Origin: Callorhinchus milii
Lineage: Eukaryota
Reading direction: 5' to 3'
Assembly: GCF_018977255.1 (NCBI RefSeq)
Contig: NW_024704755.1
Span: forward strand, 17,794,001 to 17,858,000
DNA length: 64,000 nucleotides
The notes beneath the pieces are model-generated. The model worked only from the letters and a program-made list of their open reading frames with translations. It was not told the origin of the DNA and did not search any database. Below are positions 8,000 to 56,724 of this stretch, piece by piece. Both the position numbers and the translations under genes were made by a program. Position 1 is the stretch's first letter, and every line of letters begins with the position of its first letter.

Positions 8000-8024
8000 N
8001 NNNNNNNNNNNNNNNNNNNNNNNN
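8000..8024. other. Assembly gap (25 N)
   Basis: Run of n bases. Confidence 1.
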
Positions 8025-11250: not shown

Positions 11251-11344
11251 GGCGACAGTCTCACTAAACTAGATGGGAGAGTAAGCTCTGAGAATGATGC
11301 AAAAAGACTGCAATGGGATATAGATAGGCTATGGGAGTGGGCGA

Positions 11345-17775: not shown

Positions 17776-17789
17776 GTCTGCAGATGACA

Positions 17790-18515
17790 TCACTGAGAGT
17801 GAGCATGTAGATGAGGAAACCAAGGTGGCCAAAGATGGCGCCTTGGGCTACCCTACAGGTGATTGGGCGGGGGCGGGAGGAAACACCATTTGCCAAGATG
17901 TATTGTTGGTGGTTTGTTAAATAGGACTCGAACCATGCAAGTGCGGTCCCACTAAGGTGAATCAGGGAGTAGAGGCAGTGGAGGAGGATGGCGTGACATG
18001 GTGGAGAAGGTCCAAGAGAACAAGGAAGCAGATGGAGCCCTGGTCGCAGAGAGAGTGGAAGTAATTTGTTATTTGATGAGCGCTGTCTCTGTGCTGTGAG
18101 CAGGGCGACTGGAAGGGTTCAAGTAGGCAGTGGAGGGCAAGGTGTGAAAGAAGTTGATTTGCAACCATGCATTTCAAAACTTTGGCCAGGAAGGGCAGGT
18201 GAGATAGGTCTGAAGTTTGTGAAGTTGGAGGCATCAAGGGTAGGTTCTTTTAGGAGAGGACTGATGACAGCAGTTTTGATGGGGAGTGGGACAGAGCCTG
18301 AGGAGAGGGACTGGTTGTTTGTTTCAACAGTGGGCAGAGGAGGGGGAGTTAAGTCAACAGAAGATGGGTGGGGAGGAAATCGAGGCAGCACGGGGGTAAA
18401 GGAACATAGGGTGGGGGCCGTGCTAGTAGCCGCGTTGGAGGAGAGGTTGATGAAGGATGCATGGAGGGTAGCCAAGGGAGGAGACAGCCAGGCGGATGTT
18501 GTATCACCTCTGAGG
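17790..18515 (-). mobile_element. Old L2 RT fragment (mirrored at ~57000-57725)
   Basis: SLSSGSVPLPIKTAVISPLLKEPTLDASNFTNFRPIS translation. Confidence 0.7.
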
Positions 18516-18790
18516 CAGAAGGTTGTGGATTCAAGAACACATTCTGTTGACCAAAAATAAGTTTCAAAACCTTATCCAAACATATACACTGTAGCATTGC
18601 AGAATTGGTTTATTACTTGTACATCAATGCAGTTTGTTAATTAATAATACAGTAGTAAAACTCGCAGGAGTCTGATCCGGATAAATCATATAATGGCCTA
18701 ACTTATACATCCACGAAGTCGCATTGAATTTCCTATTAAATCCACTTTAATTTATCTGTGCTAGTCATATTAACAATCATATTAACAAGT

Positions 18791-18794
<4 letters not shown>

Positions 18795-18821
<27 letters not shown>
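18795..18821. repeat. (TA)n microsatellite (mirror at 56694-56720)
   Basis: Direct reading. Confidence 0.95.
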
Positions 18822-19228
18822 GGAGTCCTGTAGCTCAGTGGTTAGAGCACTCACTTTGCAAGTGAGAGACCTAGGTTTGATTTCTAGCAGGGCGAAACCT
18901 TGGGCAAGTTTCCTAACTCCACACACCTGATAATAAACCCTCAAAAAAACATAATAATTTGGTCATTTCAATCCACGACTGTTTGTGGGACACTGCTGTG
19001 CGCAATTGGCTGCCGCAGTTTGCCGACAAATATACAGTCAATTCACTTTACTTTGTAAACCATGCCATCGGCCAACCCCCTTCCCCTCCGCTCCCTTACC
19101 CCCCCATTTCAGCTCGGGTCTGAAATCTTGTTGTTGCTGTTGTTTACAGTCTATTCTGTGAAGCGCTTGGAGATGTCTAGAAGATGTGAAAAGCGCTATA
19201 TCAAATACAAGGATTATTATTATTATTA
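18821..19228 (+). mobile_element. SINE split by a short L2 3' fragment (mirror at ~56287-56694)
   Basis: SINE head and core to ~19050, an L2 3'-UTR-like piece to ~19145, then the SINE tail. Confidence 0.7.
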
Positions 19229-19647
19229 ATCGCACAACTCGTAACGCCTCTGCCACACTTGTTAATCCAGAATTTACCGGCTGCCAGGTCAAAACTTTGT
19301 TTCTCACATCTACCGCCCATGGAACACCACACATACGCGCCCCCTCCCCACTGCGTCCCGCGTCCCGGCTCTGGGCGCAGAATATCAATGTACAGCAGAC
19401 GAGGTTTTCAGCAGTCATGGCCTCAAGCAATGCCATCGTATATCGTTTTATGATTAAAAATCCCAACAAAGCAATCAAGGACTATTACATAATAATATAA
19501 TAATAATCGTGACATTTGATACTGTCTTATGTAAACTATATGATATATTTATTAAAAAAATTTCACCGAAGGAAAACTCTTACCTCAGGGTAGTTAATGG
19601 TAGGTTTGTAATTCTCCACTGAGACACACAAATACACACAGAGGAAA

Positions 19648-19868
19648 TGATAATAATAATAATAATAATCCTTGCATTTGATATAGCGCTTTTCGCCTCG
19701 GGAGGACGTCCCAAAGCGCTTTACAGAACACACTGTAAATTTAAAGTGGGTTGACTGTATATGTGTGGGCGAACGCGGCGGCCGATTGCGCACAGCAATG
19801 TCCCACAAACAGTCGCAGATTGAAAATGACCAATTTATTATTGTTTTTGGTTTTGGAGGGATTATTAT
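19648..19868 (-). mobile_element. 5'-truncated SINE (mirror at 55647-55867)
   Basis: Core and tail of the family in reverse orientation. Confidence 0.8.
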
Positions 19869-22099
19869 GGGCGCCACATGTACACCAAGGCGAGCACCGA
19901 GCACAGGCGTGTAACATTGTTTAGTCACAACTCGATAAGAGATTTCTGTTTAAACTTCTTGTTTGAGTAAACTTTGGAACTCGCTGTCATCTTATGCTTC
20001 AAATGAAAATATTAGTATATATTTTTGCTCCATAGTATCAAAAACATTTGCTTTGAATCCTTGTATTTAACTTGGTATTTAAATTGGTTTTGCTTTGCAT
20101 ATTGTCCCCGTAGGTGACGCTGTGGAAACTCACCCTGTTATTTAGACTGCGATTTGTATTTATATTCAGATCAGTTTACTTGCACATTGGTCTTTTGGAA
20201 ACTGTCATGAGCTCTCTGTTTGCCTAATGCAGCTGCCAATCACTATGTTGTCCCCTTTAACTGGTATCAGATCAGATATTCTTCACCTGAAGTTGTGAAG
20301 ATGTTCAGGCAAAATGAGAAACCCAGCAATTTCGTACCATTCAATATATTTAAAGACAATCGCAACTGCACGTTGACACCGCACTGCACATTGCCAATGC
20401 ACAGAAAGTGACCACAGATGCGTAATCTTTGAATCTCACTAAATCTCTGAACCCGCGACTGTGGGGTTTGCAAACCAACCACCGGCGCAGCACTGTGGGG
20501 AATGGGTTCAATTTACAAACTAGATTTTCGAAAAATACTGCGGGGAAGTCATTTGCCCCAAATCTCACACATTTACACGATAGCAGAACAATTTAATTCC
20601 CATTTGGCACCAGGAAATCTGGTTATACTTTCCCAGCAGCGGCCTGAAGATTATTTATGTCCGAATCAGTAGGAACCTCGGGAGCACAGGGGGAGCTGCG
20701 GGTGGCAATGAGCACAGCTCAGTCACACTCAATATGTGAGGCGCAGTGCGAGGAGCCCCGACCCTGAGAGGGTACCTGGTGGGCAAACAGCGCGGGGGGT
20801 GGGGGCACTGACAGGGAATACAGCAGTGCAGGGAATCGTTCAGTAACACGATGTGTATGTGCCCCGAGTGCCGCTGTGGCAATTTAACCCAAACACTCCC
20901 AATAGATCGAGAGGAAAATAGTCTCAAAGAAATAAACGAGAGGGGTTTGTGGGAGAGGGTTGAGAATGAGACTTCAGAAGCTTTTGGTTTCCTGAGTCCA
21001 GTTACCAACTCAGCACTCAAACACAGTCCCAGTTTCTGAGCTAACACACAACACGGGACATATGTGACATTTATAATGTCAGAGTTTACTATCAACATCA
21101 TCCTCACATGAACTCCACAACTAACAGAGCAGTATAGCGAGTGGGTCCATCCACACAGCAGCACACCAGGCGCTCCTCAGCCACACAGTTGGGAAGTGTG
21201 AGCTCCTATTGCCCATCGCTGCTGAGTTGGCTGTTTCTGGTCGGGATTTGGGGGGAGAAGAAAATGAGCCTCAGTTCCCGCTCTGGTCAGGTTTGAAATG
21301 TTTGAAATGTGCTTTCCACTTGGGAGAAAGTCTCCGAGGCGTCAGAGTGTGTTTGCTGTTTGTGGAGTGAGGGCGCGCTGTGGGCGAGGTGAAGGCAGAT
21401 CAATGTGGCAGCACATGGCTCCTGGTCACACACCAGCCATTGGCCTTGGGCCGGCGGCCAAGGCTTGGGAACCCTCCCGTCAATGGGGAACACGTTGTCT
21501 TCGCTCTAATTCATGTGAGTCTTTCCAACAATGTCAATGTGCAGCACACGAGGCGCCGTTACACACTGTCACAGCACAGCTTGAGATACCCATAGCCCAC
21601 TCCACACTGTAGCTGTGTTTGTGGCTGTAGCGGACGGTACCAGCGCTCAGTGTGGTGTGAGCTCTTACAGTAAGTGCTCCCATCAGTTCAGAAGAGTTAG
21701 ATTAGCGACTGACCACAGACATTGTGGTTGGATTTTCGAAGATTGAATAGGCACAACGAAAGTGCAAATTGACACCAACAGTTAGTCCAAAGATTCGGCA
21801 GGATTTCTCCCTATTTCAGGAAGCCTCATCTCTGCCTCTGTCTCTGAGCTGTCCATTCCCCAATTTTTATCCTGGGCACATCCAACAGGCCTGATCTGTC
21901 CCCACTGCAGCTCCCTGTCCTGTCCAGCCGGGCAGGTCCTTCCCACATCTCACTTCTCCGTATCTGCTGAAAGATAACCTCAGCAAATCATATCTTCTCA
22001 CACGGACATGTAATAAGACCACCATCGGTTATGGAATCATAGAATTATACAGCACAGAAGGATGCCATCCTCTTCTGATCATCCTCTCTGTGTAAAGGT

Positions 22100-22620
22100 C
22101 TATCCCATGTGCTGTTATACACAACTCTGCAGCTAGTATCCTCTCCCACACTGAGCTCCGTGACCCCATCATTCCCCATTCTCGCCCGGCTCCACTGGCT
22201 CCCCGTTCCCCAGAGGGTAGCGTTTAAGATTCTCATCCTCACCTCTAAAGCCTTCCACGGTCTTTCTCCTTCCAACCTCTGTGACCTACTAAACATTACT
22301 GACCTGTCTGCTCCCTCCGCTCGGTGGTCTCTGACCGGACCACCCCATCATCAGTGGTCAGGCCTTGAGACATTCTGCCCCTGCACTTTAACCCACCCAC
22401 CCTCTCCCTCCCTCCCTTACCTCCTTCAAAGTCCGTCTCAAGAGCTTCCTCTTCGACAGCACCTTCAGTCATCTTTCCACCCCCTTGCCCTCCACCGCAC
22501 TTGACTTCAACCCCCAGCTTGGACTGTCCAACGCTGTGGGACATCCTCGCAATGTGAAAGGCGCTGTATAACCGCAATGTGTTGTTGCGCTCTCATATGA
22601 AAGTAAGTTGTTGTTGTTGA
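22100..22620 (+). mobile_element. L2 3' fragment (mirror at ~52895-53415)
   Basis: LARLHWLPVPQRVAFKILILT translation and an L2-type tail. Confidence 0.75.
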
Positions 22621-22725
22621 AACTCAAGTGTCGGCACGTGATGCTGAACGTCATTGTCCGTTTCCAATTGCTCTGGTGCTAACTCCAATCCCTAATCTGC
22701 CCCCAGGTCCCTGACACAGCTCCCC

Positions 22726-22780
22726 ATGGCTGCCACATGTGTCCCTCACTGCCTGTTGCTGCTGGGGGCTATTCACACAG
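22726..22780 (+). CDS. Gene A exon: signal peptide [18 protein letters not shown]
   Basis: ccccATGg start, hydrophobic core, phase-1 donor ag|gtaatc. Confidence 0.8.
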
Positions 22781-25700
22781 GTAATCTGCTCATTCCTCAC
22801 TCACACCATTGCTGCTCATTTCTCCCCAGCCCTGTAGTCGGTGTTGAATGTCGCTCTCTGTTTCCCGCACGTGTTTGGTTGAGCTTATAGCAGTTGTTTG
22901 GTCTTTGGTCGCTTGTGTTGCACACACATGGTTTTCTGTTTTGGCAGCGGCTGGCGGGACCTCACTGACTGTGGGTCAAAACCCTCGGGTCGCCACAGTG
23001 AGCAGAGGCGGAGAAGTTACCATTTACTGCTTTTGGCCACTCTATAAAGATCAGAAACCAGCAAAGGTGGACTGGTGGCGAGAAGGAGAAAATCGTTCCC
23101 TGGAGGACGGCAGAGATGGAAGGATCCAGATTTATTTCCTAAACAGAGCAAGTTGTGCATTGCAGCTGTTCTCAGCCAGACTGCAGGACGCGGGAGTGTA
23201 CCGCTGCCGAGTGAGACACAGAAGCGGAGCGCAGGGCCCTGGCACACGGCTGCTGGTGTTCGGTGAGTAGCCGCAGTGACAGTCGAGGCGGCGGGTTAGG
23301 TTTTTTTCGGGTTTTAATAAAGTTATAATAAAATATATTTTGTATTTTGCAACTTTCACCCAAACAATGTTCTTATATTTGGTTACAATTGTCCGTTATA
23401 CATTTTGCTACATACAAACAATTATTATTGCGAAGTAAAATGGGACCAAATTCCCGTTTAAACACTATGGAAATGTTACAGAAATAAGTATGTTTCAATG
23501 GACACCAATCACACAGCTCATGCAATCCTCTAACATGAACTTTAAATGACTGAGAGCCTATCGCTGTGTGACCAGAGAGCCAGCTTCGGGTGGTGAGCCA
23601 GCTTTGTATGAGTCTCATCGTAAAAGAAAGAACTAATATAGTTTATATTGCTGGTTAATGTGAATAACTGTTCTGTCTGTCTTACACATCTTCTTTGTAA
23701 GGGGTTGGTTCCAAAATAATGAGAGCCCTGTTGTCGATTCATATTTAGATATGCTTAACATGTAAATACTTTATTGACTGTGACATATCATGAAGCAATA
23801 ACCATAAGCTTTTCTGAAGGCTTGTTCTCACCCTCAATTGTTTTATCAATTCAGTACGTGACCAACGTGGTTCACATTCAAACAGTAAGAGATGAAGACA
23901 ACGAGCATAGTTGTGGGTTTAGATAATTACTGGCCGGCAATACTCCAAATAAAATTGCTCTTTCGTGGCTGTTTGTGGAACATTGCTGGGGCGATTAGTT
24001 GCCACTTTCACCTACAAAACACAGTCACTGCACTTTAAAGTGAATCGTGTGAAGCACTTTGAGGCGTTCTCCCAATGCCAAAGATGCTTTATCAGATACA
24101 AGGATTACTATTTATTATAAATTATTTAGTTATAGATTCTCTATTATTGGAATGCAGTAAATAGAGGATATACTGTAGAATGCAGTGTTGCTCATACATT
24201 GACCAAACGAATGACCTATTTGGGGGGATTGTTGGCCAGGACACCAGAGAGAGAAACTCTCGTCTCATTTTGATGGGATCTTTAACATCCACCCGAAAGT
24301 CCGATAGGACCTTGGTTTAATGTCTCATCTGAAGGACAGTCCTCCGACCGTGTAGCACTCCCCCAGCGCTTCATTTGAGTGTCAGTTTAGACGATGTGAG
24401 TTCAAGACGTGGGGCTTGAACCCACAACCTTCAGAGGCGAGAGCGCTACCACTGGGCTAGGCTGACATGACGGACTTGGGTCCTGGACGGATGCCTTGGA
24501 ATCCTCACATTCCTCCAAAGTAAATCGAAGGAGTCGATTAGTATTAATGAATGTCTGAGAAAATAAAAATGTAATTTAGCCAGAAGTTAATGTTCATTGG
24601 TGTCGAGCTTTCATTAAAATTTCCAGTATTTGGTTGTTTTAATCTTAGAGGGAAGGGAAGTGTGTCAGCCTGTATCAGCAAACTGGTAGCACTGCTGTAT
24701 AATATTAATCCTTGCACTTGTTGTAGCACGTTTCATGACGGGAAGAAATCCCAAAGTGCTTCTCAGGGTATAATGATAACAATATTGCATTTGATATAGC
24801 TCCTGATCACGTCGTTGAGACGTCTCAACGCACTTCATTGTAAAGTGGGGTAACTTTGTGTTTTTTAGGCAAACGTGGCAGTCAGTTTGCACACAGCAAT
24901 GTCTCACAAACAGTACGAAGTGGGGGGCAATTTTTATGAAGTGATTGTTGTCCAGGACACCGGGAGAGATAAAGCACCCTCTCCTTTTCGAGTTGTGCCG
25001 CGGGATCGATCAGAGCATTAATGAGCGTCTGTAACAAACAGTCAGTGTCCAGGTTCCGCTCTGATCTTTCCTTTGGCGGTGATGAAGGAACACATGTCAA
25101 TGTTGCACGTGGCTTGTTCTCCCCCAATGTACTACTGTTCCCCGGGTTTGAATGTTGCATCTTGTAAATTCTGCACAAAGTGATGTTGAGAATTGCTGAT
25201 GAATATCTAACATTTTGAACATTTTTAATCGTATAAAATTGGACGGTAAATTGGCGACAGTTTAAAACAATGAAATCCAAGGTTCTTTATGTGGGCCATT
25301 CAATAAAAAACAAATAGGTAATTCTAAAATAATGTAAATCATTTATTAGGCCACAGGTATGTGTCCAGTTAGGAACTATGTCAGGGTATAGAGAAGTATA
25401 GGACAGACCAGGGAAGTAATGTTCAACTGGAACAGGAAGCTGAGAGAAGCTGTTCAGAACTCTTAAGGTGTTTGAGAAGTTAAATAGGGAGAAACTATTT
25501 CCACTGGTTATTTCTATTAATTCTTCCAAATGAACGCTGCCTCCCCCCACCCCTGCCCTCGGAAATCCATCCTGGAGTCCTCTGTTCTCCCTCGGTGCAC
25601 TGCATTTTGCCCAGCCGGGTGTCTGACACATGCAGAAACCCATAACTAAGCTTAAAAGTGTCCAAACCAAACGGAGAATTCCGTGCATCCCACCTACATA

Positions 25701-28700
25701 TGGAGATTTACACGTATTGGTGTCGAAAGCTCTCTCTCTCTTTGTGGGATGTAACCTGTTTACCAACTTGCAGTAGTATTTTGTCAGGTGTGGGCTGATT
25801 AAAGCCAATGTCGGAATCTTGATTGTGAGTTGCGATGCTGCTGGAGTCTAACCAGCTAAACCCACACAGCTCGCCATTGATATCACTGTCTGACAAGCTT
25901 TCCTGCTGCTTATCCAGCTAGAACCACCCTACCTACCCGTTAGGGCTTTGGCTGCAGCATTAACGGGCTGAGTGGGATAACTTCCTGCCCCCAGTGACTA
26001 TTTGGCCCTTCCAAGCCGTGCCAATGAGCCAGGCCGGGCTGTGCTGTCATCACCAATGCCCTGGAATACTGCAGACCCGCCTGGCTCAGGAACAGGACTA
26101 CAGCCCTCCACGGAGGTTTGGCTTGAATTTGACATTTCGCTGCCAAACATGTCACCTTGGAGCCAGTTCAGCCCCAGGAAGACCCCGCTTACCCCTGCTT
26201 CAGAACAGCCTATATCAATAGATATATTGTTGGATTTGTAAAATACAGTGTTTACTTTCCAGGGTGAACAGAGTATTTCCCTTTATCCGTTATTTAGGGC
26301 GGCAACAAATATACCAAGTACAAGAGGGTGAAGTTGCACAATAATAGTTGCAGATATTTACAGGGATTTACTGAGTGGATCTGAGCCCTGGGATGGGGAG
26401 GGGGGAGAACATGGGGCCTGATACTGATAAGCAATGCTGATATTTCAAGATGAAACATATAACATAATTTTAGGAGTTTTTCATTTAAAACGCACACATT
26501 GTGCAAACGTTTAAAGTATATTCAGGATTGAGGGTAACAATATCACCTGGTTTGCAGCAGTAACTAGTTCGATGTGATTATTAAATCACAGGAGGCTGGG
26601 TTTACTCTGCTTTTACAGAGTCAATCTTATCTAACTTTCAGGACTCGCATTATAAACTTGGGTTATATTTATATATTGCCACCTGTGTAAATGCAACATG
26701 TGTTTCTGTTTCTATCCCAAGTGCCCCCGACCCCCCTGGAGATGGTGGTCTCACGGTCCGGGAGCGGAGCTGCGGCTTCTCTGACCCTCGTGTGTAAAAC
26801 GGCGGCCTTTTACCCGGAGGATGTGAATATCACTTGGTGTAAAAATGGATCAGAAATTGTAAGTGGAACAAATACAAACAGGAACCTCGCGGGGCTGTAT
26901 GAAGCTTCCAGTTTATTGATCGAGACAGAGGCGGTGCAGAGCGGAGCTGTTTATACCTGTCACGTATCTCACCTGTCCCTCCCCACTGCCGCCAACATCA
27001 GCTACACTGTCCCTGGCACTGAGACAGGCAACTCCACAGGTAAGCTTACTGACTGTCACTGACAACACAGCTGACGGTGTAGATTGGAATGATATATTGA
27101 AACAAATCTGGCCCGATAGTTTCTGTAACTTAACATTTCATTTATACCAAACCCAAGCGCAGAGCATGACGCTAAATTGGTGACACAGTAAATCACATCA
27201 TTGCTCTTTGGCGGACACTGTGGAATATCTAGTTATGGTTCTCGCAAATTGAATGCAAAATATATAGTCAATGTATAAGCAAACACCAAGTCACTCACCA
27301 CCTGATCCTATTTAATCAGGAAAAGGGAAAATATTGGGAAAGTTGTTCTTATTTATTATAAGGTTACCAGCTCCTCAGACAAATATGTAAGTCAGGATGA
27401 CGTCTCACCGAGATGTGAAGAGCGCTGTATAAGTGTAGGCTGTTGGAGAGCTCAGGGCCAGTTTATAACTGGACCAAACGCAAAATACTGCAGATGCTAG
27501 AAATCTGAAATCTGAAAACAAAAGCAGAAGTCACCGGGAACACTCAGCACTCACCAGATCTGCTGAGTCTTCCCGGCGACTTCTATTTGTATATAACTAG
27601 ACCATGCGGGACTATGTGTGCCTGGGGAAGATGCGGGTCACAAGGGGACAAGGTTTATAGAATGTATTAGAGATAATTTTCTAGATCAATATGCTGAGGA
27701 GCCGACCAGGGAACAAGCCATATTAGACCTTGTTTTGTGTAATGAAACAGGGCTGATCAGCAAACTGGAACTTAAGGCTCCTCCAGGGCAAAGCAATCAT
27801 AATTTGATCGAATTTAGCGTTAAGTTAGAGAGGGAAGTAGTTAAGTCTGAAGCAAAAGTCTTCAATTTAAATCGAGCCAACTTTATTGGTATGAGAGAGG
27901 ATTTAGCCAGAATAAACTGGGAGACTAAACTTAAAGATTTGACGGTAGACCAGCAATGGCAGACATTCAAGGAGGTAGTGCAAAATTCCCAATGAGCACA
28001 TATTCCTTTGAGGAATAAAAATGCCACGGGAAAGGTGGTGCAGCCGTGGCTAACTGGAGCAGTTAGGGACAGTATCTAATCAAAAGAAAAAGCCTATAAA
28101 ACAGCGAAAATGAGTAGTAAACCCGAGGATTGGGAGAACTTTAGGGAACAACAGAGGAGGACCAAAAAATTGATCAAGAGGGAGAAAATAGATTACGAGG
28201 GCAAACTGGCAAAGAACATAAATACAGACTCCAACAAGAGTTTTTACAAATATATAAAGAGGAAAAGGCGAGCGAGGGTGAATGTGGGTCCATTACAGGC
28301 AGAGACCTGGAGGAATTATTATGGGGGACAAAGACATGGCAGAGTCATTAAACAAGTATTTTTCTCCAGTCTTCACTGTAGAAGACACTGGAAACATACC
28401 AAAACTAGAGGACCAAGAAGACAATGTTAGCGAGCAACTTAGGGAGATTAACGTTAGTAAAGAGATGGTTCTAGGTAAATTGTCGGCTCTTAAAACCGAT
28501 AAATCCCCTGGACCGGATGGCCTGCATCCGAAAGCTTTAAAGGAGGTGGCTACTGAGATAGTGGATGGCATGTCTATAATCTTTCAAAAGTCTGTGGATA
28601 CTGGAAAAGTTCCCATTGATTGGAAGATTGCAAACGTAACTCCACTATTTAAGAAGGATGGGAGAGAAAATAGGGAAAACTATAATAATAATCCTTGCAT

Positions 28701-31700
28701 TTGATATAGCGCTTTTCACGTCGGGAGGACGTCCCAAAGCGCTTCACAGAATAGACTGTAAAGTGAATTGACTGTATATTTGTGGGCGAACGCGGCAGCC
28801 AATTGCGCACAGCAATGTCCCACAAACAGTCGTAGCTTGAAAATGACCAATTTATTATTGTTTTTTTTTTGTTTTGGAGGGATTATTATTAGGCTCTGTG
28901 TGGAGTTAGGAAACTTGCCCAAGGTTTCGCCCTCTGCCTGGAAATGAACACAGGTCTCTCACTTGCAAAGCGAGTGCTCTAACCACTGAGCTACAGGACT
29001 ATAGACCAGTTAGTTTGACGTCAGTTGAAGGGAAAATTCTTGAGTCCTTAATAAAAGATGTAGTTATGGGATACCTGGAAGACCATAAAAAGATTAGGCA
29101 GAGTTAACATGGCTTTACAAAACGGAAGTCATGCTTGACTAACCTTTTAGAATTTTTTGAGGATGTATCCAGGAGGTTGGAAAAGGGGGAACCAGTAGAT
29201 GTGGTATATTTGGATTTTAGGAAGGCATTTGACAAGGTGCCACACAAGAGGCTGTTACTCAAGATCAAGGCCCATGGGATTAATGGGAAAATATTAACAT
29301 GGATAGAAGAGTGGCTATCGGGTAGAAAGCAGAGAGTAGTGATAAACGGATCATTCTCGAATTGGCAGGAGATGTGACTAGTGGAGTGCCACAAGGATCA
29401 GTGCTTGGGCCTCAGCTATTTACCATTTACATCAATGATCTGGACGAGGACATTGAATGTAATGTGTCTAAATTCGCGGATGATACTAAACTCGGTAGCA
29501 GAGTGAGCTCTCAGGATGATGCAAAAAGATTGCAACAGGATATAGATAGGCGCGGGGAGTGGGCAAGTAGGTGGCAGATGGAATTCAATGTTAGCAAGTG
29601 TGAAATTATTCACCTCGGCAGCAAGAATAAAAGAACAGATTATTTTCTGGAAGGGGAGAAGTTAGATAGTGTTGGTATTCAAAGGGATTTGGGTGTCCTT
29701 GTACACCAGTCCCAAAAAGTTAGTTTGCAGTGCAGCAGAACTAAGAAGGCGAACGGCATGTTAGCGTTCATTGCCAAAGGTTTAGAATATAAGAGTAGGG
29801 AAGTCTTGCTGCAACTGTATAGGGCTTTGGTGAGACCGCACCGAGAGTATTGTGTGCAGTTTTGGTTTCCTTATTTAAAAAAGGACATACTTGCCCTCGA
29901 GGGGGTGCAGCGTAGATTCACTCGGTTAGTGCCTGGGATGAGGGGACTGACCTATGAGGATAGGCTGAATAAACTGGGGCTGTATTCTCTATAGAGTACA
30001 GAAGAATTAGGGGGATCTTATTGAAACTTATAAGATTCTTAAAGGGCTGATAAAGTAGACACAGAGGGACTGTTTCCCCGGTGGGAGAATCTATAACCAG
30101 GAGTCAGTCTTAAAATGAAGGGTCAGCCTTTTAGAACAGAGTTGAGGAAACATTTCTTCACTCAGAGGGTAGTGAACTTATGGAATTCACTCCCCAGAAG
30201 GCTGTAGATTCTCAGTCCTTGAACATTTTCAAGGCTGAGACTGATAGATTCTTGAAAAATAGAGTGATTAGGGGATATGGGGAGAGGGCAGGTAATCAGA
30301 GTTAGGTCAGAAGATCAGCCATGATCTTATTGAATGGCGGAGCACAGGCACGAAGGGCCGAATGGCCGACTCCTGCTCCTAATTTTTATGTTCTTATGTT
30401 CTTATGTAGAAGGCCTTGCAGTGGGGGAGGAGATCAGCCAGAGCCTCGCTCCTCACTCATGTCCAAAGACACTGGTTCCTCTTCCAAGATGTGGTGCCCT
30501 CTGAGCCGCTCCCCCTGCAGGAGGGGCGCTATGTACAAAAGCAATTTAAGTGTTTAGATTTGGAGCTGAAATGGACTTCGATCTTAAGTTGTTATTCTCC
30601 CTGTAAATAGTTACTGGACTTTAGAGCATTTGCCCGTGAAAGTGTCCACACTGCAGGTGCTGTGACAAATGCCCGAGTTATTATTATAATAATAATAATA
30701 ATAATCCTCGCATTTGATATAGCGCTTTTCACGTCGGGAGGACGTCCCAAAGCGCTTCACAGAACACACTGTAAAGGGAATTGACTGTATATTTGTGGGC
30801 GAACGCAGCAGCCAATTGCGCACAGCAATGTCCCACAAACAGTCGTAGATTGAAAATGACCAATTTATTATTGTTTTTGGTTTTGGAGGGATTATTATTA
30901 GGCTCTGTGTGGAGTAAGGAAACTTGCCCAAGGTTTCGCCCTCTGCCTGGGATTGAACTCAGGTCTCTCACTTGCAAAGCGAGTGCTCTAACCACTGAGC
31001 TACAGGACTCCACAAAGTGTATAAGTGTTGATGTGTGTTGGGCGGGTTTCCCGCTGCTCAGCTCAGGCCGAGCTCCAAACCAGAATGTAGATGATGATTC
31101 TCTTTTTATTTTATTTGGGACGTCCTCCAGACGTGAAAGGCGCTCTATAAATGGAATCTTGTTGTTGTTGTATTTCCAAGTGAAAAATATTTATCGTGTC
31201 ATGTTGTTTGTATTTTTTTTCTTAACCAAGTTCTAAATGTTGTTACAGGGGCTAAGGTCAACATGTCTTATTTGAATATTCTAAGGGAAGAAACCCTGTC
31301 TGTGTTTAACCCCAGGAGACCCGGGTTGTCTCCCCCCAGGAGACCCGGGTTGTCTCCCCCCAGGAGACCCGGGTTGTCTCCCCCCAGGAGACCCGGGTTG
31401 TCTCCCCCAGGAGACCCGGGTTGTCTCCCCCCAGGAGACCCGGGTTGTCTCCCCCCAGGAGACCCGGGTTGTCTCCCCCCAGGAGACCCGGGTTGTCTCC
31501 CCCCAGGAGACCCGGGTTGTCTCCCCCCAGGAGACCCGGGTTGTCTCCCCCAGGAGACCCGGGTTGTCTCCCCCCAGGAGACCCGGGTTGTCTCCCCCCA
31601 GGAGACCCGGGTTGTCTCCCCCCAGGAGACCCGGGTTGTCTCCCCCCAGGAGACCCGGGTTGTCTCTCCCCAGGAGACCCGGGTTGTCTCCCCCCAGGAG

Positions 31701-34700
31701 ACCCGGGTTGTCTCCCCCCAGGAGACCCGGGTTGTCTCCCCCCAGGAGACCCGGGTTGTCTCTCCCCCCCATCCCCCACATCAGTGACGTCCTTTATCAA
31801 TGAAGCTCAGCGTAGCCTCAGCTTTCGGGGTCACCACCGTGAGACAGTCTACATCTTTGATAAATTGAATGGTTTTTGGTCTCTAAAAAATTATGACAGT
31901 TTCTAAATTCGTTCATTTTCCTAATCATAAAATCATGATAACAAAATCGGTATTGAAAGTTGATGTGCGGCTCAGAGCCCATTCCCATGTGCCGAGGGAC
32001 CGGGAAGGGCTGAAGGGCTGAGGTCCGCCCACAGATTACCTCATTGAGCGAACCGCGAGCGCTTATTCAACGTTATATACGGTTAAATATAAAGGGTTAT
32101 TGCCGTCACTCTGTGGATTGGTTGCGATTGGAGGGAGAAAGAAATTGTTGAACTGACCTTTACAGTATTTGAGAGCTCCGCTGCAGCTCCGAGGGATCCG
32201 CTGTGAGTTTGTGCTGTAATGTCGCGGTGCTGTTGTTGTTGTTGTTGAACCCGCAGTTGACTCCGACCTCAGATACGCTCTGATCTCAGGCGGTGCCGCT
32301 GTTTTGCTAATTGTACTGACGGTCATTTTTCTCATCTGTCGCAAAGGTAAGAAGCGAAATCATTTTTACAATTTAATGTTTATGATGCAATAAATGATAA
32401 ATCTCCAATGATACCGAGTCACAGCGACACCCGGACCCGAGTGGCTGTGAGGACTGGGTCTGGATCCCACCTGTTGTGTTCCCAGGGACTCGGGGCAACA
32501 ACACTGCGAAGTGAATAAGTTTCTCGGGGACTCCCACAGAGAAAGAATAACGTGTTACATCCTTCAGTTTTTATTAATATCCTGTCTGTCTAATGCTGAT
32601 TTAACCTCTTACAGAATCAAACGTATATGACAAATTGAAGTGTACATTTGAACGACAGTGTACAGAGTTGATTGAAGCCCATTATTAAATTAAATCATAA
32701 ATTAATATTTATATTATTAGCGACATGGTTGACATTTATATCCAATTACTATCCACTTCCCAAACAAGCTTGCTCCATATAGTGCATCCACCTCTAAAGT
32801 GAATAACTTTGAATCGTTTAGCTAACAGGTGCTTGACGAGTTCCCATTCAAAGTTATTTTGAAACCATTGTAATGATAATAATTATAATAATATTAATTA
32901 TCCTTGCATTTGATATAGCGCTTTTCACGTCTTGTAGGTGACGATTCTACCTGACATGCCACACACCTAACCTCCTCTCCTCTTTTCCTAATTCCCTCTT
33001 TTTGTCCAACATTTGAAGAAGATGACACTTATTCTGGAATTGTGTGCACACTAGAAAAATAATTACATTTCCTGGAGCATTTATAATCTTACATAACTGC
33101 ATCACATCTCCCGGTCTCTGATCAGGAGAGAAAAGCCATAGAATAACCGGTCTCACCTTGAACCATAGCCACACCAGCCGCCCTCTGCTGCAGTGCCTCA
33201 CACACCACTTTCCAGATATATTTTTTACTTTGTTCTTAAGAAAACTATTATTTCACATTTCACGATAACTTGGAACATTCTTTAAATAATTGTTTCTACC
33301 AGGCGCAGAGAAAAAGGAAACAAAAACAATTCAATCCGAGGTTAGTGTAATTTATACATTCAAAATGCCAACAGTAGATAGTTAACTCGGAGTGTCCTGA
33401 CACTGACATAATAACTCTCACATTTCCTATAGTGCTTAAATACGTCGCCTCAAGCTTCACACATTTTTCTGTAAAATTTTTCTGTCATCAGCGGTGCCCT
33501 GCCGATCTGCCCAGCTCAGTAACCTGACTGGAGACCGTCACAGAGAGAACTTAACTCTGACCTTCTTTTGCCAATCCCACCACATTGGAGCCATTTTGTC
33601 GAGAGCAGCTTCATTTCTCAGTAACCCATTGTTTGTCATCTATTTCAATAACAACAACTTGCATTTATACAATGCCCTTCTCGCAGGATAGCGTCTCAGA
33701 GCACTTCAGTTGTAAACAGTGTCTCATGTTAGATTCACAAGATGTACTTTAATAGTGAACACTGAATGTGAAATATGTTTGTTTTAAATGGTATTGAATC
33801 ATATAGGACAATAATATTAGTGTAATAATAATCCTTGCATTTGATATAGCACCTTATCACGTTGCTGAGACATCTCAAAGCACGTCACAAGATTTGGTCA
33901 TACTCCCATCCCCCTCCCCTTCCCCTCTAACTCTTTTGAATCCATACTTCAGTTTGGGTGCAGCCCTTTAACTGTCCAGCACTTTGGGACGTTCTTCCGA
34001 TGTGAAAGGCGCAGTATAAATGTAATTTGTTATTCTTGTTGGTACACTATAAAGTTGATTGACTGTATTTTCTGGGCAAAATGCGGCAGTCAGTTGTGCA
34101 CAGCAATGTCCCACAAACATGCAATGACTGACCAATTTTATTTGGGAGATTGTTGGCCAGGATATTGGACATCTTTTCAAATAGTGCCATGGGATCTTTA
34201 ATATCTACCTAAACAGACAGTTTAATGTCTGGGTTTAATGTCTCATCTGAAGGATGATACCTCCAATAATGCAACATGCCCCATCACTGCACTGGAGTGA
34301 CAGACTACTGTGATTCCAAGTCCCAATGTGGAGTTTGAACCCTCAACTTTATGACTCAGATGCCAGAGTGCCAACACTGTAGAGGCTATTTTGTTTGGAG
34401 AAATTAATAACCTAACAATATCAACAGAACTTTATATGCTTGGACACTATGTTTCTCATTTTATAAAACTGTTTTCAATTTGTTTCGTTTTTGTGCAAAT
34501 CCATGGCCCTTCAGATCATACAAGGAGCAGCTAACGGGAGCCTCTCTTATGAAACTCTAAATTTCACTGGATCCCACAAAAATAGAAAAGTGAGACGTGA
34601 GAAGGAAAGTACAATATACAGCAAGGTACAGGTAAGGTAAAACAGAGTTCTCTGAAACTTAACTCGTGCCATTGCAATAAATGGCTATTTGTTATTCAGG

Positions 34701-36597
34701 TAACGTTTTTCATTTGTATGTAATTAACTCTACTTTATAATATTTAATAACTGAACATATAACAATCCTTGCATTTGATACAGCGCCTTATCACATCTTC
34801 GAGACGTCTCAAAGCTCTTCACAGGATATACTGTAAAGTGAATTGACTGAATATTTTGTGGCCGAATCATGGCATCCAATTGCACACAGCAGCGTCCCAC
34901 AAACAGTTGTGGATTGAGTGACCAAATTATTATTATTATTTTTTGGAGGGATTATCACCCCCGGAAAAGTGATCCACCAATGGACTAACAACCAGGTTCC
35001 TACTTACTGCTAGTTAATCATAGGCTTGTGAAGTAAGCAAATGCATTTAAAGTTTTGCCCTGTCCGGGAATTAAACGCGGGTCCTCTCGTTTGTGAGGTG
35101 AGCACTCTATAGGCTCCATATTACTAACTAAGCTCTCCAGAGTTCAGGATTTCAGGCATATTGCCTGGTCTTTGTTGCGATAGCTGACTCTGCAGGCAGT
35201 TAGGGAGTGGCAAAGGAGACTATTGCTGTCCTGATCCCAACTACTTATAATTTGGTTTAAGTGGACATTGAGTGAAATCAGCTTCAGGAGCTTTTATTAA
35301 CAACAGACGTGAAGTACAGGTGATTATTCAGTTATTTAGAGCATTGGCCTCAGTTGAAGTGTTTTCACTTTGGACACCAAATTTTGGGAATAATATATTA
35401 ATTAGCCTTGGTGGATGTTTCAGTGTCTGTTTATTAGACTGGTTTTAAAGATTTAGCTTTGGTGGGAAGTCATGGATTATGCTCCTTAGAACAAAGGAGG
35501 TTAATTTTTGTTGCTGCTGTTGTTGCCCAGGGTGTTAAGATGGCCCAATCATGAGTATAAATTTCCTGTATAAAGTGTATAACTTTGGAAATGTTGTATT
35601 ACGGTATGAGTGAAGTGAAAGTGCGGAAAGAGTTAAAACAAGGGAATGTCACAAGGTCACAGAGACGGGCCGAGTCAGCAGGGATGAGCAGTCAGATGGC
35701 ACCAGTAGGAATAAACACATCAATGATCGAAACAGTAAAAGAGGAAGAACACACTAAACTAATCAGTCCTAAAAGCTATTTGTGGACATCTCAAGGTCCG
35801 CAGAGATCACGGGATAAAGGAGAGCTAGGCACCGGAGATTAAGGAAGACGACTGAGGGAACAAGCAGTTCCGGATAATAAAGAATGGAATGTTTGAGAAC
35901 CACGGTCAAGATAAGAATAAAGACTTGACTCTGAGTCAGAAGGTTTTGTGTTTAAATCTTGCATCGGGACTTCGATTTACACAGGTTAAACTGATGCTCC
36001 AATGCAGTGCTGGGGTGTGTTGCATTATTAGAGATACTGACCTTCAGATGAGCTGTTAAATCGAGGTCCTGTCTGCCTGTTTGGGTGAATGTTAAAGATG
36101 AGAAGAGAGTTTCTCTCTCTCGGTGTCCTGGCCAACAATCCCCCCAAATATTTGTAGGACGCTGCTATGCGCAAGTGGACTGTTGTGTTCGCCTACAAAT
36201 TCAGTCACTCCATTTCACGAATATGCTGTGAAGCGCTTTGAGACGGCCTCCCTATATAATTAACTGCTAAACCAAATGCAATGAGTGTTTCTTATTGGTA
36301 TGGATCACCTGGAGAAACTCCCTTTTTTTAATAGTGCCATTTGATATTTAACATCCGGTGGACAAGCATTTTAACCATTCCCTCTTCTCCCCTTCGCAGA
36401 CCCAGGGAGCAGCGGCTGAGATCACACTGACTTACACGGCTCTGAATTTGACCAACTCCCAGAAAACTGCCAAATTTAAAGATGAAAAATGTACACAGTA
36501 CGCTGAGGTAAAGACGAGGAACCAAAGAGATAAAGAAGAGAACATTGGAACAGAATCTAGACATGTATCCGGGAAAGATCATCACGGCTGTGTGTGA
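22726..36597 (+). CDS. Gene A: spliced non-rearranging VJ-C1-TM Ig-superfamily receptor with 2 ITIM + 2 ITSM (SIRP-like / antigen-receptor-like), ~376-385 aa
   Basis: Exons 22726-22780, 22948-23262, 26722-27039, 32257-32346, 33303-33340, (33492-33518), 34515-34631 and 36400-36597. All are GT-AG, phases are compatible (1,1,1,1,0,0,0), and the frame is open to TGA. Confidence 0.85.
22948..23262 (+). CDS. Gene A exon: V-set domain with joined J-like G strand
   Basis: Acceptor ttttctgttttggcag; VTIYC...KVDWWR...DAGVYRC...[10 protein letters not shown]; donor g|gtgagt. Confidence 0.93.
26722..27039 (+). CDS. Gene A exon: C1-set Ig domain
   Basis: Acceptor tttctatcccaag; [19 protein letters not shown]...YEASSLL...[10 protein letters not shown]; donor g|gtaagc. 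Confidence 0.93.
27600..30406 (+). mobile_element. Decayed CR1 ORF2 (endonuclease C-terminal part, RT) in gene A intron
   Basis: [35 protein letters not shown] (29473-29484) and a (ttcttatg)n tail at ~30385-30406. Confidence 0.9.
28683..29000 (-). mobile_element. Young SINE inserted in the CR1 NYRP motif
   Basis: Full reverse SINE. Flanks gaaaactata / tatagaccag rejoin to ENYRP with a short duplication. Confidence 0.88.
30678..31013 (-). mobile_element. Full-length young SINE
   Basis: Reverse complement nearly identical to 3318-3646 and 60163-60488. Confidence 0.9.
31311..31770. repeat. Minisatellite, 19 copies of the ~24 bp unit aggagacccgggttgtctcccccc
   Basis: Counted by hand; units vary mainly in C-run length. 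Confidence 0.95.
32257..32346 (+). CDS. Gene A exon: transmembrane [30 protein letters not shown]
   Basis: Acceptor ...gaacccgcag, 90 nt, phase 1-1, donor g|gtaaga; uncharged hydrophobic stretch followed by RK. Confidence 0.88.
33303..33340 (+). CDS. Gene A exon: cytoplasmic 1 ([13 protein letters not shown])
   Basis: ttgtttctaccag acceptor and gag|gttagt donor; converts phase 1 to phase 0, as the ITIM exons require. Confidence 0.7.
33492..33518 (+). CDS. Gene A candidate 27-nt micro-exon (RCPADLPSS)
   Basis: tttttctgtcatcag acceptor and ca|gtaacc donor, phase 0-0. Same size and position as the gene B micro-exon. Confidence 0.45.
34515..34631 (+). CDS. Gene A exon: ITIM (LSYETL) and ITSM (TIYSKV)
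   Basis: ggcccttcag acceptor, cag|gtaagg donor, 39 codons [39 protein letters not shown]. Confidence 0.85.
35890..36245 (+). mobile_element. Older Deu-domain SINE family with a different head (other copies at ~6660-7140, ~23960-24470, ~33820-34380, ~51045-51555)
   Basis: ctgagtcagaagg...ccttcagatgag...gttaaagat...gtgtcctggccaacaatcccc followed by the Deu-type core and L2-like tail. Confidence 0.6.
36400..36597 (+). CDS. Gene A terminal coding exon: ITIM (LTYTAL) and ITSM (TQYAEV)
   Basis: cctcttctccccttcgcag acceptor; [17 protein letters not shown]...CTQYAEVK...HGCV*. Confidence 0.87.
   Translation, partial: TQGAAAEITLTYTALNLTNSQKTAKFKDEKCTQYAEVKTRNQRDKEENIGTESRHVSGKDHHGCV

Positions 36598-56693: not shown

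Positions 56694-56724
<31 letters not shown>

What the first reader, a model, noticed from the sequence alone, without database searches (positions are those of the whole stretch)
22726..36597. Non-rearranging, antigen-receptor-like VJ-C1 receptor with a SIRPalpha-style four-tyrosine tail
Seen: one exon encodes V plus a J-like G-x-G-T-x-L-x-V strand with no intervening RSS. The next exon is a true C1-set domain (C..FYP..I.W..Y.C.V.H), then an uncharged TM and ITIM-ITSM-ITIM-ITSM. Known: C1-set domains are largely limited to Ig, TCR, MHC, B2M, tapasin, SIRP and a few B7-family proteins. Germline VJ-C1 genes (PRARP/VJC1 type) are discussed as relics of the pre-RAG receptor. SIRPalpha has V(J)+C1 domains and the same tyrosine pattern, but with two C1 domains. 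Inferred: an inhibitory receptor relevant to antigen-receptor and SIRP origins.
Basis: partly seen in the sequence, partly recalled or inferred. Interest (0 to 1): 0.8.

Follow-up and report, generated by a model that had tools for sequence, protein, structure and literature searches.

The report
SIRP-like VJ-C1 inhibitory receptor gene
This elephant-shark gene encodes a non-rearranging immune receptor with one variable and one constant domain and the same four-tyrosine "off-switch" tail as mammalian SIRPα, and it belongs to a large receptor family of sharks, rays and chimaeras that databases name inconsistently and that I found described in no paper.

Summary
The window comes from Callorhinchus milii. 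On the + strand at 22726-36597 lies an intact gene with canonical splice sites. The tail reads ITIM-ITSM-ITIM-ITSM (Y284, Y307, Y323, Y345).

A shark gene (Heptranchias) and a ray gene (Mobula) group with it as orthologues. The Heptranchias gene and a ray paralogue show the same exon plan and phases.

The gene belongs to a multigene family in which all 19 named representatives looked up were chondrichthyan. Long-tailed members have uncharged TMs; many short-tailed members carry R, K or D in the TM. This is a paired-receptor family. NCBI names its members inconsistently (SIRPα-like, tapasin-related, B7-H6-like, Igλ-like).

The tail aligns in register with mammalian SIRPα (tail-only hhalign E 2e-8; shuffles and other ITIM tails score far lower). 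The V and C1 domains are not specifically SIRP-like.

Most likely it is a SHP-1/SHP-2-recruiting inhibitory receptor. SIRP-family membership is plausible but unproven, because synteny was not tested. The 376-aa tail-bearing isoform is not in the databases searched. A near-identical inverted copy of the 5' half lies at 48483-58244.

The parts
22726..22780 (+). Exon 1: start codon and split leader ([18 protein letters not shown]), ends in phase 1
   Evidence: Donor CAG|gtaatc. The sequence is identical to NCBI and UniProt proteins P0001 and P0013-P0017. NCBI models add 7-9 residues from an upstream exon through an acceptor at about 22706.
22948..23262 (+). Exon 2: V-set domain with germline-joined J-like G strand (GPGTRLLVF); Cys46, Trp61, DAGVYRC105
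   Evidence: 315 nt, phase 1 to 1, acceptor ggcag|, donor TTCG|gtgagt. Pfam V-set 34.6 bits against a cut-off of 26. No RSS nearby.
26722..27039 (+). Exon 3: C1-set domain ([17 protein letters not shown] ... VYTCHVSH)
   Evidence: 318 nt, phase 1 to 1. Pfam C1-set E 1.2e-14. PDB hits are Ig, UrIg2, SIRP and MHC C1 domains. The AF2 Ig domains have block-mean pLDDT of about 71-93, and the best Foldseek matches are Ig light chains and a TCR chain.
32257..32346 (+). Exon 4: stalk and uncharged transmembrane helix ([30 protein letters not shown])
   Evidence: 90 nt, phase 1 to 1, cgcag| and AAAG|gtaaga. Present in P0001 and P0013. AF2 predicts a helix at 230-260.
33303..33340 (+).
   Evidence: accag| and GAG|gttagt. 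NCBI isoform X1 (P0013) enters this exon and reads through its donor. Equivalent exons exist in Mobula (L001 24981-25022) and Heptranchias (L002 17082-17114), with the same phases in Mobula.
34515..34631 (+). Exon 6: first ITIM-ITSM cassette (LSY284ETL ... TIY307SKV), phase 0 to 0
   Evidence: ttcag| and CAG|gtaagg. The acceptor is used by NCBI isoform X2, whose frameshifted end DHTRSS* is the +1 reading of this exon. It aligns with Mobula exon L001 27011-27121.
36400..36597 (+). Exon 7: second ITIM-ITSM cassette (LTY323TAL ... TQY345AEV) and stop codon
   Evidence: cgcag| acceptor, TGA at 36595-36597. It is an internal repeat of exon 6 (42% identity). It aligns with ray and shark tails and with SIRPα Y470/Y496.
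17271..27031 (.). Left arm of a 9.76-kb inverted repeat carrying the 5' flank, leader, VJ and C1 exons of the gene
   Evidence: The arms differ at 7 substitutions and one 1-nt indel. Identity ends 8 nt before the exon 3 donor.
48483..58244 (.). Right arm of the inverted repeat: a second copy of leader (52789-52735), VJ (52567-52253) and C1 (48792-48487) on the minus strand
   Evidence: It corresponds to NCBI XP_042196369 (P0012) and UniProt A0A4W3GFD2 (P0002), whose C-termini read into copy-specific sequence.

Best explanation
This is an intact Callorhinchus milii gene for a type I membrane receptor. It has a non-rearranging VJ domain, one C1-set domain, an uncharged TM and a cytoplasmic tail built from two tandem exon cassettes, each encoding an ITIM followed about 22 residues later by an ITSM.

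Shown:
- The exon structure.
- The domain types.
- A well-supported clade with a shark gene and a ray gene (orthologues by inference); the same exon plan in the shark gene and in a ray paralogue.
- Membership of a large multigene family found here only in chondrichthyans. Long-tailed members have uncharged TMs. Many short-tailed members carry R, K or D in the TM.
- A specific, in-register similarity of the tail to mammalian SIRPα.

Inferred mechanism:
- The VJ face binds an unknown ligand on another cell.
- Src-family kinases phosphorylate Y284/Y307 and Y323/Y345.
- Each ITIM-ITSM pair docks the tandem SH2 domains of SHP-1 or SHP-2, which damp activation of the carrying leukocyte, as for SIRPα.
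- The charged-TM relatives presumably couple to ITAM adaptors.
- Alternative processing of this gene adds a secreted V-C1 form (intron 3 read-through, cDNA-derived entry V9KKI2) and tail-less membrane forms (NCBI X1 and X2). These could act as decoys or non-signalling competitors.
For: - Gene model and phases.
- Species and annotated isoforms.
- Pfam C1-set and V-set.
- PDB, AF2 and Foldseek show an Ig-light-chain-like V-C1 fold.
- No RSS.
- Same exon plan in Mobula (with matching phases) and Heptranchias.
- Family size and taxa: at least 170 representatives with E below 1e-30, and 19 of 19 named ones are chondrichthyan.
- Clade with Heptranchias P0056 (53% identity) and Mobula P0159, SH-aLRT 98.
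- Paired long-tail and charged-TM members.
- Tail against SIRPα: full-length hhalign E 3e-27 with all four tyrosines aligned. Tail-only score 50, E 2e-8. Shuffles 10.1 ± 2.0 with maximum 16.6, reversed tail 8.8. Other ITIM tails 15-26.
- Tyrosine spacing is 23/16/22 here and 24/17/26 in human SIRPα.
- SIRPα signalling mechanism: PMC12975943.
Against: - No annotated transcript or protein of this gene includes exons 6 and 7 in frame. The 376-aa product is absent from a 15-billion-protein collection.
- No expression, phosphorylation or ligand data exist.
- The V and C1 domains show no specific affinity for SIRP.
- ITIM-ITSM pairs are constrained by SH2 binding, so some of the tail similarity could be convergent.
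Only the SIRPα tail was verified, against P0193.
Confidence: 0.7

Rival explanations
1. It is simply the chimaera's SIRPα: a direct member (co-orthologue) of the SIRP gene lineage of bony vertebrates that has one C1 domain instead of two. In that case it would be an already known kind of gene in a new species.
For: - The tail aligns in register with SIRPα far better than the controls do.
- The V-C1-TM-tail order matches, and the family has the paired activating/inhibitory pattern seen in SIRPα and SIRPβ.
- NCBI most often names family members SIRPα-like or SIRPβ1-like.
- C1 number varies within the family: P0055 has two.
Against: - The V domain scores higher against PD-L1 V, NKp30, PD-1 and VH than against SIRPα D1.
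- The C1 domain scores higher against MHC II β2, Cλ and TCR Cβ than against SIRPα D2 or D3 (references partly from memory; with PDB sequences agree).
- In the quick tree human SIRPα D1-D2 was the designated outgroup and lies on a very long branch.
- Synteny with the SIRP locus was not tested.
- No bony-vertebrate protein appeared among the best 150 representatives.
Confidence: 0.25
2. The family is an independent VJ-C1 lineage. It could be related to MHC-linked NKp30/B7-type V domains, or be a relic of the pre-RAG receptor. On this reading its SIRPα-like tail arose by convergence or by exon shuffling of an ITIM-ITSM cassette.
For: - The ectodomain has no specific SIRP affinity, and the V domain scores best against PD-L1 V and NKp30.
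- The tail is modular. It is built of duplicated phase-0 exons, each carrying one ITIM-ITSM pair, and their number varies between genes. This makes shuffling and duplication easy.
Against: - The whole 80-103-residue tail aligns, including the spacers and the order of four motifs, not only the YxxL cores.
- A single-cassette tail (CD33) reaches only score 26.
- The C domain is a true C1 and not a B7-type C: Pfam C2-set_2 E 0.0036, below its cut-off, and PD-L1 C scores 25.
Confidence: 0.25
3. The tail exons are not used by this gene. They would be decaying or orphan exons, and the gene would make only the secreted and short-tailed products that are annotated.
For: - All seven database proteins of this gene cluster lack the tail, and the 376-aa sequence is not on record.
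- Intron 3 has taken up a LINE-like element and a 24-bp tandem array.
Against: - Exons 5-7 are open, with strong GT-AG sites and matching phases.
- Isoform X2 splices onto the exon 6 acceptor, and X1 enters exon 5.
- All four motifs are intact and aligned with those of the Heptranchias and Mobula relatives after roughly 400 My (divergence time from general knowledge).
- Automatic pipelines also miss TM and tail exons in related shark genes, as reported for UrIg2 (PMC12227049).
Confidence: 0.12
4. The locus is an assembly artefact or a pseudogene pair produced by a false inverted duplication.
For: Two arms of 9.76 kb are 99.9% identical. Copy 2 has lost the canonical AG acceptor of its V exon.
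Against: - The arms differ at 7 sites plus an indel and continue into different unique sequence, each with its own TM-type exon.
- Proteins read into each copy-specific junction: V9KKI2 (P0015) for copy 1, and A0A4W3GFD2 (P0002) and XP_042196369 (P0012) for copy 2.
- Copy 1, the gene in question, is intact throughout.
Confidence: 0.05

Closest known systems
SIRPα / SIRP paired-receptor family (mammals, birds)
   Same: - Non-rearranging V domain with a J-like strand, followed by C1-set domain(s), a TM and a tail with four tyrosines ordered ITIM-ITSM-ITIM-ITSM.
- Similar tyrosine spacing: 23/16/22 here against 24/17/26.
- The tail aligns in register (hhalign E 2e-8).
- The family contains short-tailed members with a basic TM residue, like SIRPβ.
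   Different: - One C1 domain instead of two.
- The V and C1 domains are not specifically closer to SIRP than to other V and C1 families.
- Ligand unknown, and CD47 binding untested.
- Synteny untested.
- At least six old lineages predate the chimaera/elasmobranch split.
UrIg and UrIg2 (non-rearranging VJ-C1 genes of elasmobranchs; PMC12227049, PMC10751288)
   Same: - Split leader, a single VJ exon without RSS and C1-type constant domains.
- Cartilaginous-fish genes that automatic annotation mislabels as Ig light chain and the like.
   Different: - UrIg2 has 9-11 C domains in the sharks described and forms disulfide-linked, Fc-like dimers. The gene here has one C1, no stalk cysteine and an ITIM/ITSM tail.
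- The PDB match to UrIg2 (9dmx) is only at the generic C1 level, about 20-22 bits per domain.
Ig light chains / TCR chains
   Same: Two-domain VJ-C1 ectodomain. The best Foldseek matches are light chains and a TCR chain (E about 2e-14, 20-23% identity).
   Different: V and J are joined in the germline with no RSS. The protein has its own TM and a signalling tail, not CD3 or CD79 dependence.
NKp30 (NCR3) and B7 family (PD-L1, B7-H6)
   Same: The V domain gives its best profile scores to PD-L1 V and NKp30. PD-L1 is the best V-set family in the PDB search. NKp30 also has a germline VJ exon.
   Different: NKp30 has no C domain and signals through a charged TM. B7-type V domains lack the J motif, and their C domain is not C1-set in the way this one is (PD-L1 C scores 25; Pfam C2-set_2 is below its cut-off).
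PRARP (chicken and other non-mammals) and NITR (teleosts)
   Same: Non-rearranging receptors with joined VJ domains, discussed as relics of an antigen-receptor precursor (PMC10751288, PMC11599192). Some carry ITIMs (from my own knowledge).
   Different: From memory only, since the PRARP paper was not readable here: PRARP ectodomains are built of V domains, and NITRs pair V with an I/C2-type domain. Neither has the V + C1 + SIRPα-type tail seen here. No PRARP or NITR sequence was compared.

Membership tests
SIRP family (SIRPα type) | N-terminal V-set domain with a germline-joined J-like G strand, encoded by one exon | tested here: met
   Exon 22948-23262 encodes V plus GPGTRLLVF. Pfam V-set is above its cut-off. 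No RSS.
SIRP family (SIRPα type) | Membrane-proximal C1-set domain(s) | tested here: met
   Pfam C1-set E 1.2e-14. FYP, 13 residues from Cys to Trp, and xVxH, as defined in PMC2785349. PDB C1 hits.
SIRP family (SIRPα type) | Three-domain ectodomain V-C1-C1 | tested here: not met
   There is only one C1 exon. No further Ig-like open frame lies between 27040 and 32256. The Heptranchias and Mobula relatives also have one. Family member P0055 has two.
SIRP family (SIRPα type) | Cytoplasmic tail with four tyrosines (two ITIM/ITSM pairs) homologous to SIRPα | tested here: met
   Tail-only hhalign score 50, E 2e-8, all four Tyr in register. Shuffles reach at most 16.6.
SIRP family (SIRPα type) | Ectodomain sequence closer to SIRP than to other V/C1 families | tested here: not met
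   V: SIRPα D1 44 against PD-L1 V 69 and NKp30 58. C1: SIRPα D3 63 and D2 56 against DRβ2 78, Cλ 70 and Cβ 70. SIRP is not among the best 60 PDB V hits.
SIRP family (SIRPα type) | Paired activating relatives with a basic TM residue and a short tail | tested here: met
   Family members such as P0020 (K), P0023, P0042, P0071, P0075 and P0142 (R) have short tails and a charged TM. Coupling to an adaptor is inferred.
SIRP family (SIRPα type) | Conserved synteny with the tetrapod SIRP locus | not tested
   Only ±10 kb around relatives could be fetched, and the neighbours there were other family members or absent. The window holds no other recognisable gene.
SIRP family (SIRPα type) | Binds CD47 | not testable with these tools
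   Needs a binding assay.
Rearranging antigen receptors (Ig/TCR) | V gene segment ending in an RSS, with separate J (and D) segments | tested here: not met
   V and J are contiguous in one exon. RSS-like matches are at chance level and not at the exon.
UrIg / UrIg2 | VJ followed by several C1-type domains, with specific sequence kinship to UrIg | tested here: not met
   There is a single C1. The UrIg2 structure 9dmx matches only at about 20-22 bits per domain, like any C1. Architecture as described in PMC12227049.
B7 family (PD-L1, B7-H6) | V domain without a J motif plus a B7-type (CD80-like) C domain | tested here: not met
   The J motif is present. Pfam C2-set_2 gives E 0.0036 and 17.7 bits, below its cut-off of 21, against C1-set at 54.8 bits. 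PD-L1 C scores 25.
Tapasin / TAPBPR (a name given by UniProt and NCBI to some members) | Large N-terminal tapasin-specific domain ahead of the Ig domains | tested here: not met
   The 376-aa protein is leader + V + C1 + TM + tail, and Pfam finds only Ig-type domains.

The most novel reading that the evidence does not exclude
This family would be the cartilaginous-fish representative of the ancestral germline VJ-C1 receptor lineage from which the SIRPs descend. On this reading a two-domain, light-chain-like VJ-C1 ectodomain coupled to an ITIM/ITSM tail already existed in the gnathostome ancestor. It would have existed as a paired inhibitory/activating family on innate cells, alongside or before the RAG-invaded antigen receptors. 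That would make these genes the best living model of the pre-rearrangement receptor proposed by Hatherley et al. 2009.
Probability: 0.12. Interest if true: 0.85.

Novelty: new variant of a known kind. Interest (0 to 1): 0.55.

Why it matters
C1-set domains are almost confined to antigen receptors, MHC, β2m, tapasin and SIRPs. Germline VJ-C1 genes are the main material for reconstructing how Ig and TCR arose. Hatherley et al. [quoted passage not shown]

A conserved, multi-lineage VJ-C1 family with a SIRPα-type tail in chimaeras, sharks and rays would place a SIRP-like paired-receptor system at the base of jawed vertebrates. It offers concrete genes for testing:
- SHP recruitment;
- ligand identity, including CD47;
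- linkage to MHC paralogous regions.

On the practical side, current annotation mislabels the family and misses the inhibitory isoform of this gene.

Tried and rejected
- A 6-exon model that used a weak AAG acceptor at 34523-34524 to keep the frame. I dropped it once the Mobula gene revealed the small exon and the strong 34515 acceptor fitted.
- Sequence search of the PDB with the whole protein, the V domain and the C1 domain, and Foldseek of the AF2 model. These confirm the domain types but cannot tell SIRP from Ig, TCR or MHC. All C1 domains score about 20-25 bits, and Foldseek saturates with Fabs.
- The word-seeded homology search reached only chondrichthyan relatives.
- The tail-only search from human SIRPα listed only the best 120 hits, all mammalian SIRPα or unnamed. 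It verified the reference sequence but gave no non-mammalian SIRPs.
- Literature. No paper in the held library describes this family. The UrIg (PMC10530332) and B7H6/NKp30 (PMC3709836) papers were not held. The supplements of PMC10751288 do not mention these genes.
- Synteny. Four relatives were fetched with 10-kb flanks. They showed only family members or nothing.
- I did not fetch the window's own locus from the public assembly, so as not to read masked letters.
- A proper V and C1 phylogeny against TCR, IgL, NKp30, NITR, PRARP and B7-H6 could not be built from verified sequences. These are a lead only.
Full report
**Source and identity.** The window comes from the elephant shark, Callorhinchus milii. 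A spliced translation of the region is 100% identical over its shared part to NCBI XP_042196458 ("signal-regulatory protein beta-1-like isoform X2") and to related entries on an 18.1-Mb scaffold.

**Gene model.** All exons lie on the + strand.
- A split leader at 22726-22780 ends in phase 1.
- The V exon at 22948-23262 runs uninterrupted into a J-like strand ([12 protein letters not shown]).
- The C1 exon is 26722-27039 and the TM exon is 32257-32346.
- Two tail exons follow at 34515-34631 and 36400-36597.

Joining the TM exon directly to the strong acceptor at 34515 shifts the frame and ends in DHTRSS*. That is exactly NCBI isoform X2. Mapping the Mobula hypostoma relative P0003 onto its locus showed a small phase 1-to-0 exon between the TM exon and the first tail exon. 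The window has the same exon at 33303-33340, with accag| and GAG|gttagt sites. NCBI isoform X1 enters it and reads through its donor.

The resulting model has 7 exons, all with GT-AG sites, phases 1,1,1,1,0,0, and encodes 376 aa. This exact protein is not in the 15-billion-sequence collection. The cDNA-derived UniProt entry V9KKI2 reads through the exon 3 donor and would be a secreted V-C1 form.

**Domains.**
- Pfam gives C1-set E 1.2e-14 (54.8 bits, cut-off 21) and V-set 34.6 bits (cut-off 26). CD80-like C2-set_2 stays below its cut-off.
- The C1 domain meets the criteria of Hatherley et al. (PMC2785349): FYP at the BC loop, exactly 13 residues between Cys148 and Trp162, and C-H-V-S-H after the F-strand cysteine.
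- AlphaFold2 with a 20-sequence family alignment gives confident Ig domains (block-mean pLDDT about 71-93) and a TM helix at 230-260.
- The best Foldseek matches are Ig light chains and a TCR chain (E about 2e-14, 20-23% identity).
- RSS-like sites occur in the window only at chance frequency, and none lies at the V exon.
- The TM ([22 protein letters not shown]) is uncharged.
- The tail reads LSY284ETL, TIY307SKV, LTY323TAL, TQY345AEV, i.e. ITIM, ITSM, ITIM, ITSM.

**The family.** A profile of the chimaera protein and ray relatives was searched with HMMER against 1.84 billion representatives. It found 170 proteins with E below 1e-30. Apart from giant multi-Ig proteins, the best 150 are 170-500-aa V-C1 proteins. 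All 19 representatives whose names I looked up are chondrichthyan. The genera are Callorhinchus, Heptranchias, Heterodontus, Hemiscyllium, Chiloscyllium, Stegostoma, Scyliorhinus, Carcharodon, Mustelus, Mobula, Hemitrygon and Amblyraja. The word-seeded search added Pristis and Hypanus.

NCBI's automatic names are inconsistent. They include SIRPα-like, SIRPβ1-like, tapasin-related, B7-H6-like, Igλ-like, TCRβ-like, PD-L1-like and MHC class II-like. This fits a family with no characterised close relative.

Members fall into two kinds. Some have long tails with 3-6 tyrosine motifs and uncharged TMs. Others have short tails, many with R, K or D inside the TM. This is the pattern of paired inhibitory and activating receptors.

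In a quick maximum-likelihood tree the window gene groups with Heptranchias P0056 (53% identity) and Mobula P0159 (SH-aLRT 98). I read this as an orthologue group older than the chimaera/elasmobranch split. The Heptranchias gene has the same plan plus a third tail exon. Its tail exons are phase 0-0 repeats, each starting with TK and each carrying tyrosine motifs: an ITIM-type and an ITSM-type motif in the first two, one tyrosine in the last. In the window, exon 7 is likewise a diverged repeat of exon 6. Other C. milii paralogues lie on the same scaffold at about 15.37 and 15.63-15.66 Mb.

**Relation to SIRPα.** A database search then returned a 504-aa protein (P0193) identical over the tail. 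The 11 ectodomain differences look like the known allelic variants.

Profile-profile comparison of 17 long-tailed family members with 12 mammalian SIRPα sequences gave probability 99.7% and E 3e-27 over 331 columns. All four tyrosines aligned: Y284 with Y429, Y307 with Y453, Y323 with Y470, and Y345 with Y496. Any two V-C1 proteins would score well over the Ig domains, so I repeated the comparison with the tails alone.
- Family tail profile against the SIRPα tail: score 50, E 2e-8, 80-103 aligned columns.
- 150 shuffles of the SIRPα tail: 10.1 ± 2.0, maximum 16.6. The reversed tail scored 8.8.
- Tyrosine spacing: 23/16/22 here and 24/17/26 in human SIRPα.

The ectodomain tells a different story.
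- The family V profile scores PD-L1 V 69, NKp30 58, PD-1 47, VH 46 and SIRPα D1 44.
- The C1 profile scores MHC II β2 78, Cλ 70, TCR Cβ 70, SIRPα D3 63 and SIRPα D2 56. PD-L1 C reaches only 25.

These figures are, where the non-SIRP references came from memory. The PDB searches with deposited sequences agree: PD-L1 is the best V-set family, and all C1 domains score about 20-25 bits. The tail is therefore specifically SIRPα-like. The ectodomain is a generic VJ-C1 without demonstrable SIRP kinship.

**Most likely function.** The gene most likely encodes an inhibitory receptor that works like SIRPα (mechanism as reviewed in PMC12975943). On this reading, ligand engagement by the VJ domain leads to Src-family phosphorylation of the two ITIM-ITSM pairs. 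These dock the tandem SH2 domains of SHP-1 or SHP-2 and damp activation. Charged-TM relatives would provide the activating counterpart. Secreted and tail-less isoforms of this gene would act as decoys. The architecture, conservation and tail similarity are shown. Phosphorylation, SHP binding, cell type and ligand are inferred.

Whether the family is a true member of the SIRP lineage remains open. The tail, the domain order and the paired-receptor pattern fit. The three-domain ectodomain and a specific ectodomain affinity are not met. Synteny could not be tested, because only 10-kb flanks of relatives were available. I found no paper describing the family. The nearest literature concerns UrIg and UrIg2, which differ in having many C domains and no ITIM tail (PMC12227049, PMC10751288).

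**Surroundings.** The gene's 5' half lies in the left arm (17271-27031) of an inverted repeat. The right arm (48483-58244) carries a second leader-VJ-C1 copy on the minus strand. The arms differ at only 7 substitutions and one indel. Two of the substitutions affect splice sites.
- The AG acceptor of the V exon (22947 G) is AA in copy 2 (52568).
- A C-to-T change (27029 against 48485) gives copy 2 a GT donor 12 nt upstream of copy 1's donor.

Beyond the arms the copies diverge. Copy 2 has its own candidate exons with correct phases: a TM exon (47538-47446), a small exon (46591-46560) and a terminal exon encoding a single ITIM, LNYAVL (39099-39031). NCBI's model for copy 2 (P0012) instead skips the TM exon. 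Proteins that read into each copy-specific junction argue that both copies are real.

**Verdict.** The gene is a new variant of a known kind: a SIRP-type non-rearranging VJ-C1 receptor. It is one member of a sizeable, mis-annotated family found here only in chondrichthyans, and not a unique relic.

Noticed in passing
window 17271-27031 and 48483-58244: A 9.76-kb inverted repeat with a 21.4-kb unique spacer. The arms are 99.9% identical (7 substitutions and a 1-nt indel). It places two tail-to-tail genes with almost identical promoter, leader, VJ and C1 parts but different 3' halves. This suggests recent duplication or arm-to-arm gene conversion.
   Followed up: partly
window 52568 (copy 2) versus 22947 (copy 1); 48485 versus 27029: Copy 2 has AA instead of the AG acceptor of its V exon, so it cannot splice leader to V canonically. 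A C-to-T change gives it a new GT donor 12 nt upstream of copy 1's C1 donor. NCBI protein P0012 nevertheless shows the canonical leader-V junction.
   Followed up: partly
window minus strand 47538-47446, 46591-46560, 39099-39031: Candidate downstream exons of copy 2, with canonical splice sites and matching phases. They are a ray-like uncharged TM exon (DHLVLICSVVGLINSLGIIIIMLCVKVKQSK), a 32-nt small exon and a terminal exon with a single ITIM (VQTGTDENRLNYAVLNLPHSKK*). Together they would give a 289-aa one-ITIM receptor with nearly the same ectodomain as gene 1 (identical V and C1, stalk 4 residues shorter). This is hypothetical.
   Followed up: partly
window 22848-22947 (and 52667-52568 on the minus strand): Intron 1 holds an ATG in frame with the V exon. 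It encodes a hydrophobic stretch ([36 protein letters not shown]) and could serve as an unspliced alternative leader. This is of interest for copy 2, which lacks the acceptor.
   Followed up: no
window 27597-30300: Long open frames in intron 3 with LINE-type reverse-transcriptase motifs (for example [13 protein letters not shown] and FADDTKL). I take this to be a retrotransposon insertion; the identification rests on my reading of the motifs. Similar elements and SINE-like units ([20 protein letters not shown]) recur across the window.
   Followed up: no
window 31310-31768: A tandem array of a 24-bp unit (CCCCAGGAGACCCGGGTTGTCTCC), 19 copies, 98% matches, in intron 3. It is open in several frames on both strands.
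   Followed up: no
window 8025-9670 and 39852-41064; 10913-11252 and 41441-41723: G-rich (+ strand) and C-rich (+ strand) degenerate microsatellite arrays of about 13-17 bp, with extreme GC skew. There are also 27-37-bp repeat arrays that look like reverse complements of each other on the two sides of the locus. The 25-N run at 8000-8024 abuts the first array.
   Followed up: no
relatives P0020, P0023, P0025, P0042, P0071, P0075, P0142; P0055 and P0099: Family members with R, K or D in the TM and short tails are putative activating partners. One skate member has a tandemly duplicated C1 domain (V-C1-C1). One model has a duplicated TM-tail block, which is probably a model or assembly artefact.
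   Followed up: partly
L002 16254-18757 (Heptranchias perlo orthologue): The tail is built from three successive phase-0 exons, each starting with ACCAAA (TK) and carrying tyrosine motifs (an ITIM-type plus an ITSM-type in the first two, one tyrosine in the last). Cassette-exon duplication explains why family members have 4, 5 or 6 tyrosines.
   Followed up: yes
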